Assembly: GCA_053919585.1 (NCBI GenBank)
Contig: CM132783.1
From: Euprymna scolopes
Lineage: Eukaryota
Strand: one strand, 5' to 3'
Length of the DNA stretch: 64,000 nt
Position 1 is the stretch's first letter; each line of letters starts with the position of its first letter. Positions 9,111 through 64,000 of the stretch are shown piece by piece. The position numbers were made by a program, and so were the translations under genes. The notes under the pieces were generated by a model. That model saw only the letters and a program-made list of their open reading frames with translations. It did not search any database and was not told the origin of the DNA.

Positions 9111-12100
9111 TAAGCTGCTTAAAGGTCGGTACTACTTGGTGACCAGTAGTCTGAGATGTCGGAAATTCTTCTGTCTCTGTCTGTCCTTGTGGCCATGTCA
9201 CTAGTAAGGGTGCTGGAGGTAAACGTTTTGTCTGGGCTGACGTTATCCGCCTGATAGTCAGGGACCCGAACCTTGGATTAACCACTAAGGAGGCTGTCCT
9301 ATCAGCAGGCGCAAAGTACTGGGACTGCTGTATTGTCATTTGGTGAGTGGATCTGGGCCATGCAGTAGTCTCTGGTGGGGCCTCTCGATACCACACTAGT
9401 GGGTAATTGTTACGGCTTTACCTTTTCGTGTGCTACAAATAAAAAAAAAAATTCCTGTCTTTTTCTCTCTTACTTTCCCTCTCTGTACTGCTCTAACCAA
9501 GTATGCCGACCTATTCCACATATCCCAAAACCTCAACATGAAATATCTCCAGAATAAAAACTCGATTAAACCTAGAACCCCATCTTCCAGCGTAGACCCC
9601 TACTACGAGGTCTCCTTCTCCAATATCAGGGGTCTACGTTCCAACCTTCCAGAAGTTGAAACCCAATTACAGGAGACGAAACCGGACATATTATTTCTAA
9701 GTGAAACTGGAATAGGGCCGACCACTTCCCTAGATGAGTTCATAATTAATATATACTCCAATTTAACAGCTAAATCTGACACCCAAGATCGCCATGGGCA
9801 TGGAATATGTGCCTACATTAAGGATGGCTTCCCATGTGGCAGGGATATCTCTAGAGAAGATCCTAATTTACCTTATATGTGCACTTGCTTACACCACTGC
9901 ATTTATATTTGCCCTCTATAGGTCCCACAACAGCGGAGTTACTAAGAGCATATCTGAGAAAATAGACCACATACTGTCTTCACATCCTTCGGCTAACATC
10001 CACATCTGTGGTGACTTCAACGTCCATAACGTGGAATGGCTGACCCATTCAAATAAGACAGATGATGAGGGGAGGTTTTGTCATGATTTTGCCATTGCTT
10101 ATGACCTCACTCAGATAGTTCGCGAACCCACCCGTGTGCCCGATACACCCAATCAATATGCAAGCATCTTAGACCTTTTTCTCTCAACGTCCCCTGAGCT
10201 ATGTTCATGTACCGTTCATTCTCCTCTAGGATCCTCCGACCACTCCGTCGTATCAGTTAAGATAAAAAACGAAATGTAAGAAGCCCCCAGACGTACCCCT
10301 CCACCGTACTGTATACCAATACTCTATGGCTGACTGGGATAGCTTCCGTACATTCATATCTGATTTACCTCTGCATTCCATGTTTAAAAAGGAAGTGTCC
10401 TCTATAGTATCAGATCTGACCGAATGGTTAATTGTAGGCATTGACCAATTCATACCATCTAAAAAATTCCAACAAAAACCTGCCATGGTTCTCCCCAGAA
10501 TGTGCTGCTGCTATCGCGCACAGAAATCACTTTTTCCATAGCTACCAACGTAATAGATGCACTGAGACTAAAGCTGCTTTCAGGACTGCCAGCAACCACT
10601 GTAAAAGAGTTAAAAAAAATGCAAGAGAGCTATATGCCCAGTCTGTTAAATCCAAGGTAGCTGATCAGCGGCTTGATTCTCACCAGTGTTGGCAAATAAC
10701 AAATAGGATCCTGAACAGAAGTGTGCGTTCTATCCCAACCATTATCAATGGACCAGAGGTCATCTCGTCAGCGTCAGACAAGGCCAAACTATTTGCAAAG
10801 AACTTTGCAGCTAATTCTACCCTATGCGACGAAGGCCATCAACTCCCCATATTTCCTCCTATAACACAGACCAAGCTAGGTAACATACAAATATCCGTGC
10901 ATGAGGTCGCCAAGCTAATAAAAAACCTAGATTCCAGTAAAGCAACTGGCCCTGATGGCATCCCAATTATAGTGTTAAAAAAGCTTCAGCCAGAACTTGC
11001 TCCCATACTTACGAAACTATTTAAGCGCTGCCTTAAGGAGAAGTGCTTTCCGACCCCTGGAAGACCTCATCAGTTTGCCCTGTATTTAAGAATTCAGGTG
11101 ATAAGTCATCTCCCTCTCAGTACAGACCAATAAGTCTTCTCTGTGTTATGAGTAAGTTGCTGGAATCAATATTAAATAGACAAATAGTCAACCACCTCAG
11201 CAGGAATAACCTTCTTAGTGACACACAATATGGTTTCCGCTCTGCAAGATCTACCGCAGATGTGCTGACGGTTATATCCCAGAGGATTAGTGAATCTCTT
11301 GACAAAGGCTTCCTTTCTAGGGCAATTGCTCTTGACATATCAAAGGCCTTCCACAAGGTATGGCATAATGGTCTACTTCACAAGATTTCCAGCTACGGTA
11401 TAACTGGAAATGTTTTCTCAATCAATTAATCATTTCTCTCCGATAGGCTCATAAGAGTAGTGGTAGATGGACAAAAATCAGAGGCCTGCAATTTAAATGC
11501 TGGGGTCCCTCAGGGGTCAATCCTGGGCCCAACTCTCTTCCTGATCTACATCAATGACCTCCCTAAACACATACTTAAATCATTCGTTGACATCTATGCT
11601 GATGACACGACCATCTACAACAACACACCAAAGGCTGTAAATGACAAAGTTCTCTCGGATTCTCTCTCCTCTGATCTCGAGCGCGTGGTTCAGTGGGGGA
11701 AGATGTGGCTAGTTACCTTTAATGCATCCAAAACCAAACTCCTATCCTTACATCATCAACGCTCTGATCCCCATCTGGCATCAATTGTGATCGATGGCTC
11801 TCGTCTGGGTGAGGCCCCGATGTTTTGACAAGCTTCTGGGTTTGACCTTTACTCCTGATCTGAAATGGAACACGTACATCAAGTCTGTTGCCAAGGTCGC
11901 TGGAAAGATGGTGGGATCCTTCTACCGCTCCAGAAGATATCTCACTACTGATGCAATTCTCTATCTATATAAAAGCCAAGTACGTCCAAGGATGGAATGC
12001 TGTTGCCATATCTGGGCAGGAGCTGCCAAAAACAGCCTATCATGCCTGGACAGAATACAAAATAGACTTCGTGGCTTAGTGGGGGATGCCCTTTTCTCTA

Positions 12101-47914: not shown

Positions 47915-50900
47915 GTTGTTGTTCTTGTTCTTCCTCGTCTCTTTCTTCTTCGTCTTCTATTTTTATCTTAGTCCTCACAATGGGTTTATCAGAGGTCATC
48001 AAAGATCTCTTCTTGAAAACAGCATTTGGCGTTCCCTGGAAGCAGACTGAAACAAGTCTCCTCAGGTTTTAATACTCTCCACCTCTTTCGATATTTTTTT
48101 TGCATTATCGCAACCACTGAATGCCATCGATTTTTCGTCCGCAGCGTCTATTGTTCTTCGCTGGAATTTGAGCGGCAATAAGCCTTCCCAAGGTCCCACT
48201 TCTCTTCGCACATATTCTGCTGGGGTCTGGTCAGTTAATCGGTCTTTCTTTCATCGTTGACTCCTCTTGGTTATTTCGTCTCGCTCTTTTTTTTTGGGGG
48301 GGGACAATGGTGTTGAAATGGACGGATGGGGTGAGAGTTGGGTTAGAGAAGTTATAGAAATGCGGTTTCAGTGTCTTTGTTTCAATGTAGCTTTAAATGT
48401 GTTGCTTTGCGGCAGTTTGTCTGGACCGTGCATGTTGCTCATGTCTGTTAATTTCCACATTCAAGGGGGTTTCTCTAATAGTTCAGCAATCATTTCTTTG
48501 ATTCCAATTTCTGACATTCTTTTATCAAAGTTTTTCGGGATTGTTCCTAGTGCTTCTACTATTATAAGTATTATTTTGATTTTCTTTATCTTCCATATGG
48601 CTTTCAACTCTCTGGCTAGCTCTGTGTATTTGCTCACTGTCTCCTTTTCTTTGATATTTACCCGGTAGTCAGCTGAAACTTAAACGTCTAAATTTTGACA
48701 GAAGTTCCTTTGCTGTTCATTATTACGACATCCGGCCATCTTGAATGGATGGGCTTATCAGTGTATATGCCCCTGTCTTTTAGGACTTTGTGATTCTAGT
48801 TGCTGGCTCATGTTTGTATCACTTGTCTGTGCGTTCGTGATGCAAATATTTGCATATTTCTCAGTATATGACACTTCCTACTTTGTTATGTTTGTTCTTG
48901 AATTACTTTTAGGCCAGTTGTCTGCATTCATTTATGATGTGGTTTATCGCCTTATCTCTTTGCCCACAAAGTCTGCATTTTCTGTTTTTTTATGTTTTGT
49001 CGAACTGTGTTTTAATGTGGGTAATTCCTATCAAGTTATTTTGTGCTGCAGTGATAAGGGGTTACGTTTTTCGACTGCTGTGTACTTTTTGCCTACATGT
49101 CGAAGTGTTTTTTTGTGAAACTTCAGTGTATTTTCTCACAAAGCTGTCATATAATGGTTTCTCTTCCCACTATTTTTCCTTTCTCTCATGCTTCGCCTTT
49201 CTATTTTCTTTTATGTCGATTTTTCCGTGTCCATCGCTGCTATGATCATTTTTAAGTTGTTTGACTTGTGCATTTGTATACTTCTTTTTGATGCTATTCA
49301 CACAGTCTTCTATATAAACCAGTCCCCTTCCACCCGCTTTCCTTTTTACGTAGAGTCCGTAAACAGTGTCCCTCGGATGTAGTGCGTTGTGCATAGTCAT
49401 AAGTTTCCTGATATACTGACAGAGCTGTCTAATTTCTTCTTTAGTCCACCCTATGATTGGTCCAGATTATCTTACTAGTGATGCTGCCCATGTATTTATG
49501 CCTTGTATAAGGTTTCTGGTATAAAGTTTGGTTTTCAGAATTTTTCTTGTTCTCCTGAGGTATTCTTTTCCAATTCTCTCATTTATTTCTGCTGCTTTGA
49601 TAGTGCCTGCTTCCAGTACTCCTAGGTATTTATAGGTGTCTAGTTCCACTGGTGCCTTCCTGTTCGTTTGGTTGGGTAGTTCGATGGCTTTTGTCATCTC
49701 TAATTTCCCCTTTCCTATAAGTAGTAGTGCGCACTTTTGCATACCAAGCCGGATTTGGATACCCTTGCTGAACATCCTGGATGTATTTATTAATGTCTCT
49801 AGTTCACTTTTGGTCCTTGCGAAAAGTGTCAGATCGTCTATGTACATCATATTGTTTATTTTTTCTTTCGTGTTAGAGAAATTGTTTACCAGTGCATTGT
49901 TTAGGGGCATCATGGCTATGATGTACATAAGGGTTAAAGTTAATCTCCTTGGAAGATACCGCTTTTGTATGTCAATTTCTCATATGCGTTGTCCATCAGC
50001 TGTCAGTTCCAGTCTCCATATCCTTACTCCGTTTTCAATCACGTTGATGACCCTGATTGATAGTGTATACATTTTAAGCATTCTATTATCCCTGCTGCAG
50101 GGATCTTGTCGTACCTCTTTTTTGTAGTCGATCATTGCCATAACTAAATTTTCTTCTTCTTTTAACCTATTTTAGGATCTTTTAGTCTCTATAAAACAAA
50201 CCACGTGTTCCTCTGTTTCCTTTCTGGCATCCTTTCTGTTCCTAGGGGAGAAGTCCACAATAATTCAGAGTCAGATAGCCTTTTTCCCTTAGTGGTGCTC
50301 TCAGTATTTGCCAAATAATGCGTTAGCACATGATAGGCATATAGTTGCTGAGGTCGGTTCCCTTCCCTGTACCCTTCTGCATCAACATAGTTCTGCCTTT
50401 TGTCATCCCAGCTGGTACGTTTTTTTTCCTGTATACATCTTTTGATGTATTGAGCTAGTCTTTCGTGTAGAATTGTATAATATTTTGAACCAGTATGTTT
50501 GTATTACTTTGCGATTTTTCCTATGGTTTTCTTTATGATTTCTTGGCTGATTTCACTCACTGCCCCTTCTTCGATTTCTACTAACTCTTCTTTCATGTCG
50601 TTAAGCCATTCGGCATTCCTGTTGTAGTCTTGTTGTTCTTTCTATATCTTACTCCAATAAATTTTTTTTCTTGGGTTTGGTCGTTCCGTTTTTGTTTTTC
50701 CTCTGTTTACGTATTGAAAGAATTGGCTTTCATTGTTTTCAAATGTCCTGTTTGGTTTGCATTGTTGAGATTTATATCTATATCGTCATTCCGTTCTTTG
50801 TTTTGCTACTATTTTTTTGCTTCAGATCTTAGTGTTTCTCATTTAGCCTTTTCATGCGAGTCACATGTCCAATTTAGAATTTGCTTTACGTCACTTACCT

Positions 50901-62443: not shown

Positions 62444-62511
<68 letters not shown>

Positions 62512-63012
62512 GGGGTGTATAATCGTATATTTTACCGTATATGTATTTTCAAGTATCTAATCAGAGAATGTTTAATGTTTTTTAACATTGAAGCTTAAAT
62601 TGTTTATCTTATTATCAGTTTTGTAATTATTGCATGGCTTTTCTATACGCCGAATNNNNNNNNNNNNNNNNNNNNNNNNNNNNNNNNNNNNNNNNNNNNN
62701 NNNNNNNNNNNNNNNNNNNNNNNNNNNNNNNNNNNNNNNNNNNNNNNNNNNNNNNNNNNNNNNNNNNNNNNNNNNNNNNNNNNNNNNNNNNNNNNNNNNN
62801 NNNNNNNNNNNNNNCGAGAGAGAGCTCATCTTATAACGATTAGGTCACTGTCTGGCTGGTGTAAAGAACATTTAAACAAAAATTAAAACGATTAAATTCA
62901 ACGTTATTTATCGCAGTTAATGGTAGCCGAATGGATACGGTCTTTGCTAATCTAGCCAAAGAGGTCTCGTGTTGCCGAGTTCGACTTGTTCGACTGGTGT
63001 TAATCGTCACAC

Positions 63013-63059
63013 CCTGCAATGAAGATTCCCGAAAAGAATAAAACACTAGTGTACGTAGG
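63013..63059 (+). ncRNA. Type I hammerhead ribozyme, copy 1 (core mutated)
   Basis: cctgca-ATGAAGA-ttcccgaaaagaat-AAAAC-actagt-GTA-cgtagg, with C3>A and G12>A. Confidence 0.65.
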
Positions 63060-63358
63060 TATTTAATTATTATAGTAAAAAAATAATTATGACAGCCCCT
63101 TTAAGAAATCTGATTCTTATCATTTTACACTTTCAGTTAAATTAAACTCGGTCAATGTAGCTCTCATACATAGACCATCGTATAACGATTAGATCACTGT
63201 CTGACTTACGTAAAGAACATTTGAAAAATTAAAATGTTTAAATCCAATGTTATTTCACCCGGTTAATGTTAGCCCAATGGATACGGTCTTTGCTAATCGA
63301 GCCAGAGATTCCTCGTGTTGCCGAGATCGAATCCTTCGACTGGTGTTAATCGCGACAC

Positions 63359-63404
63359 CCTGCACTGAAGATTCCCGAAAGGATGACACAATAGTCTCTG
63401 TAGT
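63359..63404 (+). ncRNA. Type I hammerhead ribozyme, copy 2 (stem II intact, GAAA and stem III mutated)
   Basis: cctgca-CTGAAGA-t-tcc-cgaaa-gga-t-GACAC-aatagt-CTC-tgtagt. Confidence 0.65.
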
Positions 63405-63616
63405 TACTTAATTATTAGAGTAAAAAACACATTATGACAGCCCCTTTTAGAAATTCGTTTCCCATCGTTGAGCACGTTTAGTTGAATTAAAATCAGTCAA
63501 TTTAGCTCCTGTACTTGGATCATCGTTTAATTATTAGATAAGTGTCTGACTGACGTAAACAACGTTAAAAATAAATTAAAATATTCAAATTCAACGTTAT
63601 TTCACGCGGTTAATGG

Positions 63617-63681
63617 TAGCCGAATGGATACGGTATTTGCTAATCGAGCGAGAGATGGCTCGTGTTGCTGAGTTCGAATCC
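63617..63681 (+). promoter_or_regulatory. RNA polymerase III type 2 internal promoter (tRNA-Ser-like head) in unit 3
   Basis: A box TAGCCGAATGG (63617-63627) fits TRGCNNARYGG; B box GTTCGAATCC (63672-63681). Equivalents are at 62924/62979 and 63270/63325. Confidence 0.75.
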
Positions 63682-63705
63682 TTCGACTGGTTTTAATCGT
63701 GACAC

Positions 63706-63751
63706 CCTGCACTGAAGATTCCCGAAATGATGAAACACTAGTGTCTGTAGG
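63706..63751 (+). ncRNA. Type I hammerhead ribozyme, copy 3 (catalytic core intact)
   Basis: Stem I cctgca/tgtagg, core CTGAAGA (63712-63718), GAAA (63732-63735), stem III within palindrome ACACTAGTGT, and cleavage triplet GTC (63743-63745). Confidence 0.85.
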
Positions 63752-64000
63752 TATTTAATTATTAAAGTAAAAAAAAATAGGTATATATATACTAAAATCT
63801 AGAGTCTTAGATGTATTCAATCTTAATTCTTATTACGGATATTTCATCATGGATTTTGCTTATAAGTAAGTTACCATGCTGGCTTTTTTAATTATTCTAC
63901 CTTTTTGGGAGTTGTCTGGTATATGTTGCTTGTACGATATAACAAATTACATATCTTAATTTTAATTTTCTTCATTTGAAACTCAGCCACAGTCCTGCAA

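What the first reader, a model, noticed from the sequence alone, without database searches (positions are those of the whole stretch)
62815..63778. Tandem hammerhead-ribozyme array: a candidate retrozyme family producing ~346-nt self-cleaving, possibly circular, RNAs
Seen: three head-to-tail ~346-bp non-coding units, each carrying a type I hammerhead at the same position. The consensus is cctgca CUGAAGA u-ucc-cgaaa-gga-u GAAAC acuagu GUC/uguagg. Copy 3 keeps the whole catalytic core and a 6-bp stem I, with predicted cleavage after 63745. Established: animal non-LTR retrozymes, Schistosoma Sm-alpha and newt satellite 2 are tandem units of a few hundred bp with type I hammerheads, processed to monomer and circular RNAs. 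Inference: this is a genomic concatemer of such an element, probably an unannotated family in this host, mobilised in trans by an autonomous retroelement RT (LINE and Penelope remnants are abundant nearby).
Basis: partly seen in the sequence, partly recalled or inferred. Interest (0 to 1): 0.92.

Follow-up and report, generated by a model that had tools for sequence, protein, structure and literature searches.

The report
Decayed tRNA-headed hammerhead retroelement array
This is an old, silent 2.7-unit copy of a very abundant small mobile element of a large mollusc genome, which joins a tRNA-like promoter motif to a hammerhead-like self-cutting RNA motif; the kind is already known from blood flukes, newts and mussels.

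Summary
Window 62823-63784 is a head-to-tail array of 2.7 units of about 345 bp, and each unit has a hammerhead-like motif at the same place.

It belongs to a genome-wide family. The 34-nt motif occurs 24,645 times at up to 2 mismatches in this 5.9-Gb genome.

- Each unit has Pol III A- and B-box-like motifs just upstream of the ribozyme motif. This is the design of the schistosome Sm-alpha SINE.
- Every sampled insertion ends in the same 36-nt tail followed by (TA)n. The 5' ends vary, and many insertions exceed one unit. This is the insertion style of Penelope-like elements, not LINEs.
- The motif is not canonical. Positions 10.1/11.1 are U/U instead of G-C, stem II has 3 bp, and Rfam Hammerhead_1 scores 12-14 bits against a threshold of 34. 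It folds as a hammerhead only as a dimer.

In this array, copies 1 and 2 have broken cores and copy 3 has a weakened stem II. No locus-specific RNA was found. Self-cleavage, circles and Pol III transcription remain inferred.

Earlier notes of this scan describe the same kind of element on other DNA of this genome, including a 347-nt unit that is probably this family. Verdict: a new member of a known kind, of moderate interest.

The parts
62816..62823 (.). (GA)n run flanking the 5' end of the array. The masked N stretch 62656-62814 lies just upstream and was not filled.
62823..63053 (+). Copy 1: a 5'-truncated unit, starting near unit position 118
   Evidence: BLAST to the family unit; alignment
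62924..62934 (+). A-box-like motif of copy 1 (TAGCCGAATGG). The matching B-box-like motif at 62978-62988 has decayed.
63013..63059 (+). Hammerhead-like motif of copy 1, inactive by sequence: C3>A, G12>A, C17>A and an extra A in stem II
63054..63398 (+). Copy 2: a full unit, 0.92 identical to the family majority
63270..63334 (+). A-box-like (63270-63280) and B-box-like (63324-63334) motifs of copy 2
63359..63404 (+). Hammerhead-like motif of copy 2, inactive by sequence: GAAA>GACA and GUC>CUC
63399..63745 (+). Copy 3: a full unit framed from cut site to cut site (347 nt), 0.90 identical to the family majority
63607..63699 (+). tRNA-like head of copy 3: 7-bp acceptor-like pairing CGGUUAA/UUAAUCG, A box 63617-63627, UUGCUAA loop, B box 63671-63681. 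Neither ARAGORN nor Rfam calls it a tRNA.
63706..63751 (+). Hammerhead-like motif of copy 3. The core boxes are intact and the predicted cut is after C63745. Positions 10.1/11.1 are U/U, and a G>U change weakens stem II.
   Evidence: Rfam RF00163, 14.1 bits (gathering 34); variant count
63746..63784 (+). 3' tail: the first ~36 nt of the unit repeated after the last hammerhead motif. This is the fixed 3' end of all family insertions.
63782..63791 (.). Short (TA)n remnant directly after the tail

Best explanation
The array is one old insertion of a non-autonomous, non-coding retroelement of about 342 bp.

Each unit has four parts: an AT-rich 36-nt start, a body, a tRNA-like head with Pol III A and B boxes, and directly after the head a type-I-hammerhead-like motif.

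Shown here:
- The family is dispersed on all large scaffolds and the motif occurs tens of thousands of times.
- Every sampled insertion ends at the same point, 36 nt past the predicted cut site, followed by (TA)n.
- The 5' ends vary, and about half of the insertions run past one unit into a partial upstream unit. Some insertions have 2 to 9 units.
- Tail-to-tail inverted pairs occur.
- This is the partial-tandem, 'tail' and microsatellite-biased architecture described for Penelope-like elements. A very young Penelope-like element with the same (TA)n end is abundant in this genome.

Inferred:
- Longer-than-unit RNA is made, either by Pol III from the A/B boxes of an upstream unit or by read-through.
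- Two hammerhead motifs pair through their 10-nt palindrome into a double hammerhead and cut after GUC.
- The unit RNA may be circularised by a tRNA ligase.
- A Penelope-like reverse transcriptase/GIY-YIG nuclease primes on the AU-rich tail from a nicked (TA)n site and copies more than one unit.

The copy in the window diverged about 8-10% per unit after insertion. It has lost two of its three ribozyme cores and is not detectably transcribed.
For: Array and motif.

Family size and dispersal:
- 3,851 first-look candidates on many scaffolds.
- The 34-mer occurs 24,645 times at <=2 mismatches and 5,105 times exactly with any N7. The reversed control gives 0.

Architecture:
- About 50 of about 57 sampled elements end at unit position 29-37 followed by (AT)n. 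The 5' ends are spread over the unit, and 25 elements are longer than one unit plus tail.
- The features match published Penelope-like element traits: 5' truncation, partial tandems, a 30-40-bp tail and (TA)n bias (PMC8557442).
- A Penelope-like element with an 806-aa ORF and 98-99% identical copies is present in tandem and inverted copies. It ends in a hammerhead-like motif plus 60 nt plus (AT)n.

Promoter motifs: A box with 1 mismatch and B box with 1-2 mismatches, 43 nt apart. Only 6 of 5,000 shuffles match this.

Folding:
- The dimer is -29.0 kcal/mol against -17.4 for two monomers, with a 10-bp intermolecular stem III.
- The circular unit has MFE -79, z = -3.0.

Sister families: other families in the same genome keep the same design with different stem sequences, and canonical Hammerhead_1 arrays score 42-57 bits.

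Age: window units are 0.90-0.92 identical to the majority and 0.83 to each other.

Known design: the Sm-alpha SINE pairs a Pol III promoter with a hammerhead and needs tandem copies (PMC6765202; PMC2770079).
Against: - The motif is non-canonical. Rfam gives 11.7-14.1 bits against a gathering score of 34. Positions 10.1/11.1 are U/U, and no G-C version exists in the genome. The G10.1-C11.1 pair is reported as highly conserved even in minimal Penelope hammerheads (PMC4209133).
- The monomer hammerhead fold (-5.9) is less stable than a competing fold (-8.7).
- RNA-seq reads cover the family on both strands and mostly run on into unrelated sequence. There is no pile of ends and no dip at the clean cut site.
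- Insertion 5' ends do not cluster at the cut site. They cluster at AT-starting positions 7, 32-40 and 221.
- The tRNA-like head is not recognised by ARAGORN or Rfam.
- The abundant Penelope-like element has no sequence similarity to the element's tail, so the partner is unidentified.
- In decayed copies the hammerhead region is no better conserved than the body (0.949 against 0.963).
Confidence: 0.72

Rival explanations
1. The element is the same, but the hammerhead-like motif no longer cuts. It is kept only because the motif plus tail is the 3' module that the partner reverse transcriptase recognises, as with SINE tails. No unit-length or circular RNA is made.
For: - U/U at 10.1/11.1 in all 5,105 exact copies, and no G-C version.
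- A sub-threshold Rfam score.
- No read ends or dip at the cut site.
- Insertion ends lie 36 nt past the cut site rather than at it.
- The same motif-plus-tail module is joined to several different tRNA-like heads, as expected of a recognition module.
- Penelope hammerheads have low activity in vitro (PMC4209133).
Against: - All 13 invariant core nucleotides, the GUC triplet, a 6-bp stem I and a perfect 10-nt stem III palindrome are kept in the family majority.
- The dimer fold is strongly favoured.
- Position N7 varies freely between A and U, as the hammerhead model allows.
- Sister families keep the three-stem design with other sequences.
- The RNA libraries tested were poly(A) or cDNA libraries, which would lose cut or circular RNA.
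Confidence: 0.3
2. It is an ordinary tRNA-derived SINE mobilised by a LINE, which is the option the reader named first. The tandem form arose later by unequal crossing-over.
For: - LINE fragments lie in the window: an AP endonuclease at 9794-10279 and an RT fragment at 49467-49928.
- The tail is A-rich.
Against: - There is no poly(A) end. The 3' end is a fixed AU-rich tail plus (TA)n.
- About half of independent insertions carry a partial upstream unit.
- Tail-to-tail inverted pairs occur.
- Units of the window array differ from each other by about twice their distance to the family majority. This fits insertion as a multimer rather than later duplication.
Confidence: 0.1
3. It is a local satellite duplication, or the core boxes match a hammerhead by chance, with no mobile family behind it.
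For: None found.
Against: Thousands of dispersed copies exist on all scaffolds. The reversed pattern has 0 matches.
Confidence: 0.01

Closest known systems
Sm-alpha / Sj-alpha SINE-like elements of Schistosoma (Ferbeyre et al. 1998; Laha et al. 2000; as summarised in PMC6765202 and PMC2770079)
   Same: - Unit of about 335-347 bp.
- tRNA-derived Pol III promoter placed just upstream of a type I hammerhead, so that a cut monomer carries its promoter at the 3' end.
- Found both dispersed and in tandem, with more than 10,000 copies.
- Short palindromic stem III.
   Different: - No sequence homology was tested or seen, and the host phylum differs (mollusc rather than flatworm).
- Here the hammerhead has U/U at 10.1/11.1 and fails the Rfam threshold, whereas Sm-alpha is a fast canonical ribozyme.
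- Here the tRNA-like part is too decayed to be called a tRNA, whereas tRNAscan calls Sm-alpha as tRNA-Gln.
- Here every copy ends in a fixed tail plus (TA)n.
Animal non-LTR retrozymes (Cervera & de la Pena 2020, PMC7229834; Li et al. 2026 preprint 10.64898/2026.07.22.740005)
   Same: - Tandem non-coding repeats of a few hundred bp.
- GC below 45% (35-38% here).
- Type I hammerhead with a weak stem III that needs a dimer.
- Co-occurrence with Penelope-like elements.
   Different: - Circular RNA and self-cleavage are demonstrated for mussel, coral and axolotl but not here.
- Most copies here are 1.0-1.4 units rather than long arrays.
- A Pol III-type head is present.
Penelope-like elements and their minimal hammerheads (Cervera & de la Pena 2014, PMC4209133; Craig et al. 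2021, PMC8557442)
   Same: - 5' truncation, partial tandem (pseudo-LTR) and a 30-40-bp tail.
- Inverted neighbours and (TA)n insertion bias.
- Hammerhead near the element end that should act as a dimer.
   Different: - This element has no ORF.
- Its tail is unrelated in sequence to the one abundant Penelope-like element examined.
- Penelope hammerheads keep G10.1-C11.1.

Membership tests
Hammerhead ribozyme type I (Rfam RF00163) | Conserved boxes CUGANGA and GAAA, and an NUH cleavage triplet | tested here: met
   Met in copy 3 and in the family majority. Not met in copies 1 and 2.
Hammerhead ribozyme type I (Rfam RF00163) | Three helices in type I topology, including the G10.1-C11.1 pair at the base of helix II | tested here: not met
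   Stem I has 6 bp and stem III has 3 bp (10 bp as a dimer). Helix II is U.U plus 3 bp, or 2 bp in copy 3. No G-C variant occurs in the genome.
Hammerhead ribozyme type I (Rfam RF00163) | Score at or above the family gathering threshold (34 bits) | tested here: not met
   14.1 bits for copy 3 and 11.7 bits for a family-typical copy. No hit in normal scans. Other families in the same genome score 42-57 bits.
Hammerhead ribozyme type I (Rfam RF00163) | Site-specific self-cleavage | not testable with these tools
   RNA-seq shows no ends at the site, but the libraries are poly(A) or cDNA.
Animal non-LTR retrozyme | Non-coding tandem repeats of 170-400 bp, each with a type I hammerhead, and GC below 45% | tested here: met
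   The caveat is that the hammerhead is non-canonical.
Animal non-LTR retrozyme | Expression as unit-length linear and circular RNA | tested here: inconclusive
   Family reads are present on both strands but mostly embedded in other transcripts. This locus is silent. No total or RNase R RNA was available.
Sm-alpha-type Pol III hammerhead SINE | Internal Pol III A and B boxes upstream of the hammerhead | tested here: met
   A box with 1 mismatch and B box with 1-2 mismatches, spaced 43 nt apart; 6 of 5,000 shuffles match. It is not called a tRNA by ARAGORN or Rfam.
Sm-alpha-type Pol III hammerhead SINE | Transcription by RNA polymerase III | not testable with these tools
   39 of 52 units lack a T4 terminator, which would allow read-through. 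That is only compatible with Pol III transcription and does not show it.
Non-autonomous derivative of a Penelope-like element | Penelope-type insertion architecture: 5' truncation, partial tandem, 30-40-bp tail and microsatellite bias | tested here: met
   compared with PMC8557442.
Non-autonomous derivative of a Penelope-like element | Sequence similarity of its end to the end of an autonomous Penelope-like element | tested here: not met
   Only one abundant family (806-aa ORF) could be examined, and it showed no similarity. Other families could not be fetched.

The most novel reading that the evidence does not exclude
The U10.1/U11.1 hammerhead variant is a working dimer-only ribozyme, and the A/B-box head is a working Pol III promoter. 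The family would then be a self-transcribing, self-cutting element in a cephalopod-like mollusc that makes circular RNA and parasitises Penelope-like elements. [quoted passage not shown]
Probability: 0.3. Interest if true: 0.6.

Novelty: new member of a known kind. Interest (0 to 1): 0.38.

Why it matters
- The finding extends the Sm-alpha design (Pol III head plus hammerhead in one short retroelement) from flatworms to a mollusc with a 5.9-Gb genome, where the motif occurs more than 24,000 times.
- It gives an invertebrate case for the recent proposal that animal retrozymes depend on Penelope-like elements. The support comes from insertion architecture rather than sequence homology.
- The fixed U/U at 10.1/11.1 is a natural test of how far the hammerhead core context can drift in a proliferating element.
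- For genome annotation, standard Rfam scans miss this family entirely.
- The copy in the window itself is dead and has no functional importance.

Tried and rejected
- Rfam scans of the whole window, and at E<=10 on 1.2 kb, found no hammerhead. Only a 63-nt search did.
- ARAGORN and Rfam found no tRNA in the window, the unit or 10 loci. The claim that the head is tRNA-Ser(GCU)-derived therefore rests only on the A/B boxes, a UUGCUAA loop and a 7-bp acceptor-like pairing read by eye, and I keep it as 'tRNA-like'.
- I tested whether insertion 5' ends pile at the predicted cut site, which would record cleavage in vivo. They do not. The apparent starts at position 1 either continue upstream or are ambiguous, and the clusters at 7, 32-40 and 221 all begin with AT/TA next to (TA)n.
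- An 'end' signal at L004:1812 in one run (11 of 50) sits next to two mismatches of that copy and is absent at the clean upstream site, so I rejected it as evidence of cleavage.
- The search for the autonomous partner failed. A negative-coded pattern mostly returned variants of the same element. The abundant 806-aa Penelope-like element does not share the tail.
- Ferbeyre 1998 (PMC108972) is not held, so Sm-alpha is cited through reviews.
- The masked N stretch was not filled. One script output incidentally printed a few dozen letters of locus L001 that fall inside it. They were not used and are not reported.

Full report
**1. What is in the window**

Positions 62823-63784 hold 2.7 head-to-tail units of about 345 bp. 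Tandem Repeats Finder reports period 347, 2.7 copies and 82% matches, and the three units align at 83% mean column identity.

- The left end abuts a (GA)n run and then the masked N stretch 62656-62814, which I did not fill.
- The right end is an AT-rich 36-39-nt piece followed by a short (TA)n run.
- GC is 35-38%, and no ORF is shared between units.

Each unit carries a hammerhead-like motif at the same position:

| Copy | State of the motif |
|---|---|
| 3 | Reads CCUGCA CUGAAGA UUCC CGAAA UGAU GAAAC ACUAGU GUC / UGUAGG |
| 1 | Has lost C3, G12 and C17 |
| 2 | Has GACA for GAAA and CUC for GUC |

Rfam gives no hit at gathering threshold or at E<=10 on 1.2 kb. When only 63 nt are searched, Hammerhead_1 is the best family, at 14.1 bits (E 0.4) against a gathering score of 34.

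**2. It is a genome-wide family**

The window lies on scaffold C1 of a 5.9-Gb assembly. One unit finds copies on most large scaffolds, with 3,851 first-look candidates. Copies selected with a body-only query are 93-96% identical to the query. Fifty-two independent units are 0.926 identical pairwise (median).

Counts of the 34-nt motif CTGAAGATTCCCGAAAGGATGAAACACTAGTGTC:
- 24,645 matches at up to 2 mismatches, with none for the reversed control.
- 5,105 exact matches when N7 is free. N7 is A in about two thirds and U in about one third of the listed matches.

The family majority keeps CUGAAGA, GAAA, GUC, stem I and the stem III palindrome, and 33 of 52 sampled units keep all boxes.

The window units are 0.90-0.92 identical to the majority and 0.83 to each other. 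This means an old insertion whose units have diverged independently since.

**3.

(a) *A tRNA-like head.* Just upstream of the motif lie an A-box-like TAGCCGAATGG (1 mismatch to TRGCNNAGTGG) and, 43 nt later, a B-box-like AGTTCGAATCC/G (1-2 mismatches to GGTTCGANNCC).
- Only 6 of 5,000 shuffles give such a pair.
- A UUGCUAA loop and a 7-bp acceptor-like pairing can be read by eye.
- ARAGORN and Rfam do not call a tRNA, so 'tRNA-like' is as far as the evidence goes.

(b) *Insertion architecture.* I framed the unit from cut site to cut site.
- About 50 of about 57 sampled elements end at unit position 29-37. This is the same 36-nt tail after the last hammerhead motif, and (AT)n follows directly.
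- The 5' ends vary.
- About 29 elements are at most one unit plus tail, 20 carry a partial upstream unit, and 5 have 2 to 9 units.
- The 5' flank is also (TA)n in many elements.
- Several tail-to-tail inverted pairs occur across a (TA)n run.

Craig et al. 2021 describe exactly these traits for Penelope-like elements: strong 5' truncation, partial tandems forming pseudo-LTRs, a 30-40-bp tail, inverted neighbours and (TA)n bias (PMC8557442).

The genome also holds a very young, very abundant Penelope-like element:
- It has an 806-aa ORF with a C-terminal GIY-YIG domain.
- Its copies are 98-99% identical, and there are 15,396 first-look GIY-YIG candidates.
- It occurs in tandem and inverted copies.
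- It ends with a hammerhead-like motif, about 60 nt and then (AT)n.

Its end has no sequence similarity to the tail of the window family, so the partner is not identified.

(c) *The motif is not canonical.* The pair at 10.1/11.1 is U/U instead of G-C, which leaves 3 bp in helix II.
- The G-C version does not occur once in the genome.
- Copy 3 has a further G>U that opens the loop-closing pair. That variant is rare (138 exact copies), so it is probably a decay mutation.
- Cervera and de la Pena list G10.1-C11.1 as highly conserved even in minimal Penelope hammerheads, which themselves cut poorly in vitro (PMC4209133).

**4. How it would work**

Folding results:
- The hammerhead fold of a single motif (-5.9 kcal/mol) loses to another fold (-8.7).
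- Two motifs together reach -29.0 against -17.4 for two monomers. They form a 10-bp intermolecular stem III through the palindrome ACACUAGUGU while both stems I stay formed. This is the double-hammerhead arrangement known for newt, avocado sunblotch viroid and Penelope motifs.
- The circular unit folds to -79 kcal/mol (z = -3.0).

With the A/B boxes directly upstream of the ribozyme, a cut monomer would carry its promoter at its 3' end. Only tandem or partial-tandem copies can then give full-length RNA. The same logic is described for Sm-alpha (PMC6765202; tRNA-derived nature, PMC2770079). It fits the excess of insertions longer than one unit.

Other families in the same genome support the design:
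- One family has a B-box-like motif, a canonical hammerhead CUGAUGA GUCG UAGA CGAC GAAAC ACGU GUC, an AT-rich tail and (AT)n (L012:470-590).
- Arrays of about 410 bp score 42-57 bits on Hammerhead_1.
- The three-stem design is thus kept with unrelated stem sequences.
- The motif-plus-tail module of the window family is also found joined to other tRNA-like heads (loose ends; matches).

**5. What RNA data say**

Raw RNA-seq reads of the host label and of a second related label cover a family-typical copy on both strands about equally.
- 65-88% of laid reads continue into unrelated sequence.
- There is no pile of ends and no dip at the clean cut site.
- The one weak 'end' signal sits next to mismatches of the reference copy.
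- These libraries are oligo-dT or cDNA libraries and would lose cut or circular RNA. The result therefore argues only against efficient cleavage of the captured transcripts.

At 97% likeness nothing locus-specific lies on the window array. Only 37-60-nt family-shared pieces were laid, and depth was zero on the unit-specific stretches and the flank. I conclude that this array is not detectably transcribed in these runs.

**6. Comparison and verdict**

By design the element works like Sm-alpha/Sj-alpha. By form it is like animal non-LTR retrozymes (PMC7229834). By architecture it inserts like a Penelope-like element, in line with the 2026 preprint that derives animal retrozymes from Penelope-like elements (10.64898/2026.07.22.740005).

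Membership in the canonical hammerhead family is not established, because the threshold and the 10.1/11.1 pair both fail. Self-cleavage, circular RNA and Pol III transcription are all inferred.

I found no paper on hammerheads in cephalopods apart from a mention of Naiad elements. The host looks like a mollusc with at least 46 chromosome-scale scaffolds; that it is a cephalopod is my own guess.

Earlier notes of this scan describe tRNA-headed hammerhead arrays elsewhere in this genome, including a 347-nt unit with a tRNA-Ser-like head. They reach the same reading, which I had reached before consulting them.

The finding is real. It is a new member of a known kind, and the copy in the window is a dead one.

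Noticed in passing
G000:C8:10432194-10435515 and G000:C3:89840417-89842627 (loci L035-L042): Arrays of about 410-bp units with a canonical type I hammerhead (GUCUAA CUGAUGA GCCC AAAUA GGGC GAAAC UCGA GUC UUGGAC) score 48-57 bits on Rfam Hammerhead_1. This is a separate, canonical retrozyme family in the same genome.
   Followed up: partly
L012:470-590 (G000:C31, just upstream of a 9-unit array of the window family): A 5'-truncated copy of a sister family: B-box-like motif, canonical hammerhead with G10.1-C11.1, a 46-nt AT-rich tail and (AT)n. The design is the same but all stems have different sequences.
   Followed up: partly
L074-L078 (for example G000:C3:120036900-120045100): [quoted passage not shown] It occurs in partial tandem and inverted copies and ends in a hammerhead-like motif plus about 60 nt plus (AT)n. 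There are 15,396 first-look GIY-YIG candidates genome-wide.
   Followed up: partly
Unit position 221 (inside the A box), e.g. L004:1348, L008, L020, L030, L073; and unit positions 151-154 in three multi-unit arrays (C19:93433598, C29:112409571, C31:64792360): Recurrent 5' ends of independent insertions at the same unit positions. Position 221 begins with AT and may reflect microhomology with (TA)n, but two of the six have non-(TA)n flanks. Positions 151-154 have no such explanation.
   Followed up: no
L077:5234 and loose ends of run X22 at L004:1364: Another hammerhead-like motif (CUGACGA AUUCUC..GAGAAU GAAAC) is found joined to the tRNA-like head of the window family in RNA reads. Heads and ribozyme modules seem to be shuffled between families.
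   Followed up: no
window 62445-62509: A perfect (TA)32 microsatellite lies about 310 bp upstream of the array, separated from it by unique sequence and the masked stretch. (TA)n is the family's preferred insertion context.
   Followed up: no
window 9794-10279 (+) and 49467-49928 (-): LINE fragments: an AP-endonuclease domain (Exo_endo_phos_2, E 4.7e-15) and a weak RT fragment (RVT_1, 28.2 bits, just under the cut-off). I did not verify any Penelope remnant in the window.
   Followed up: partly
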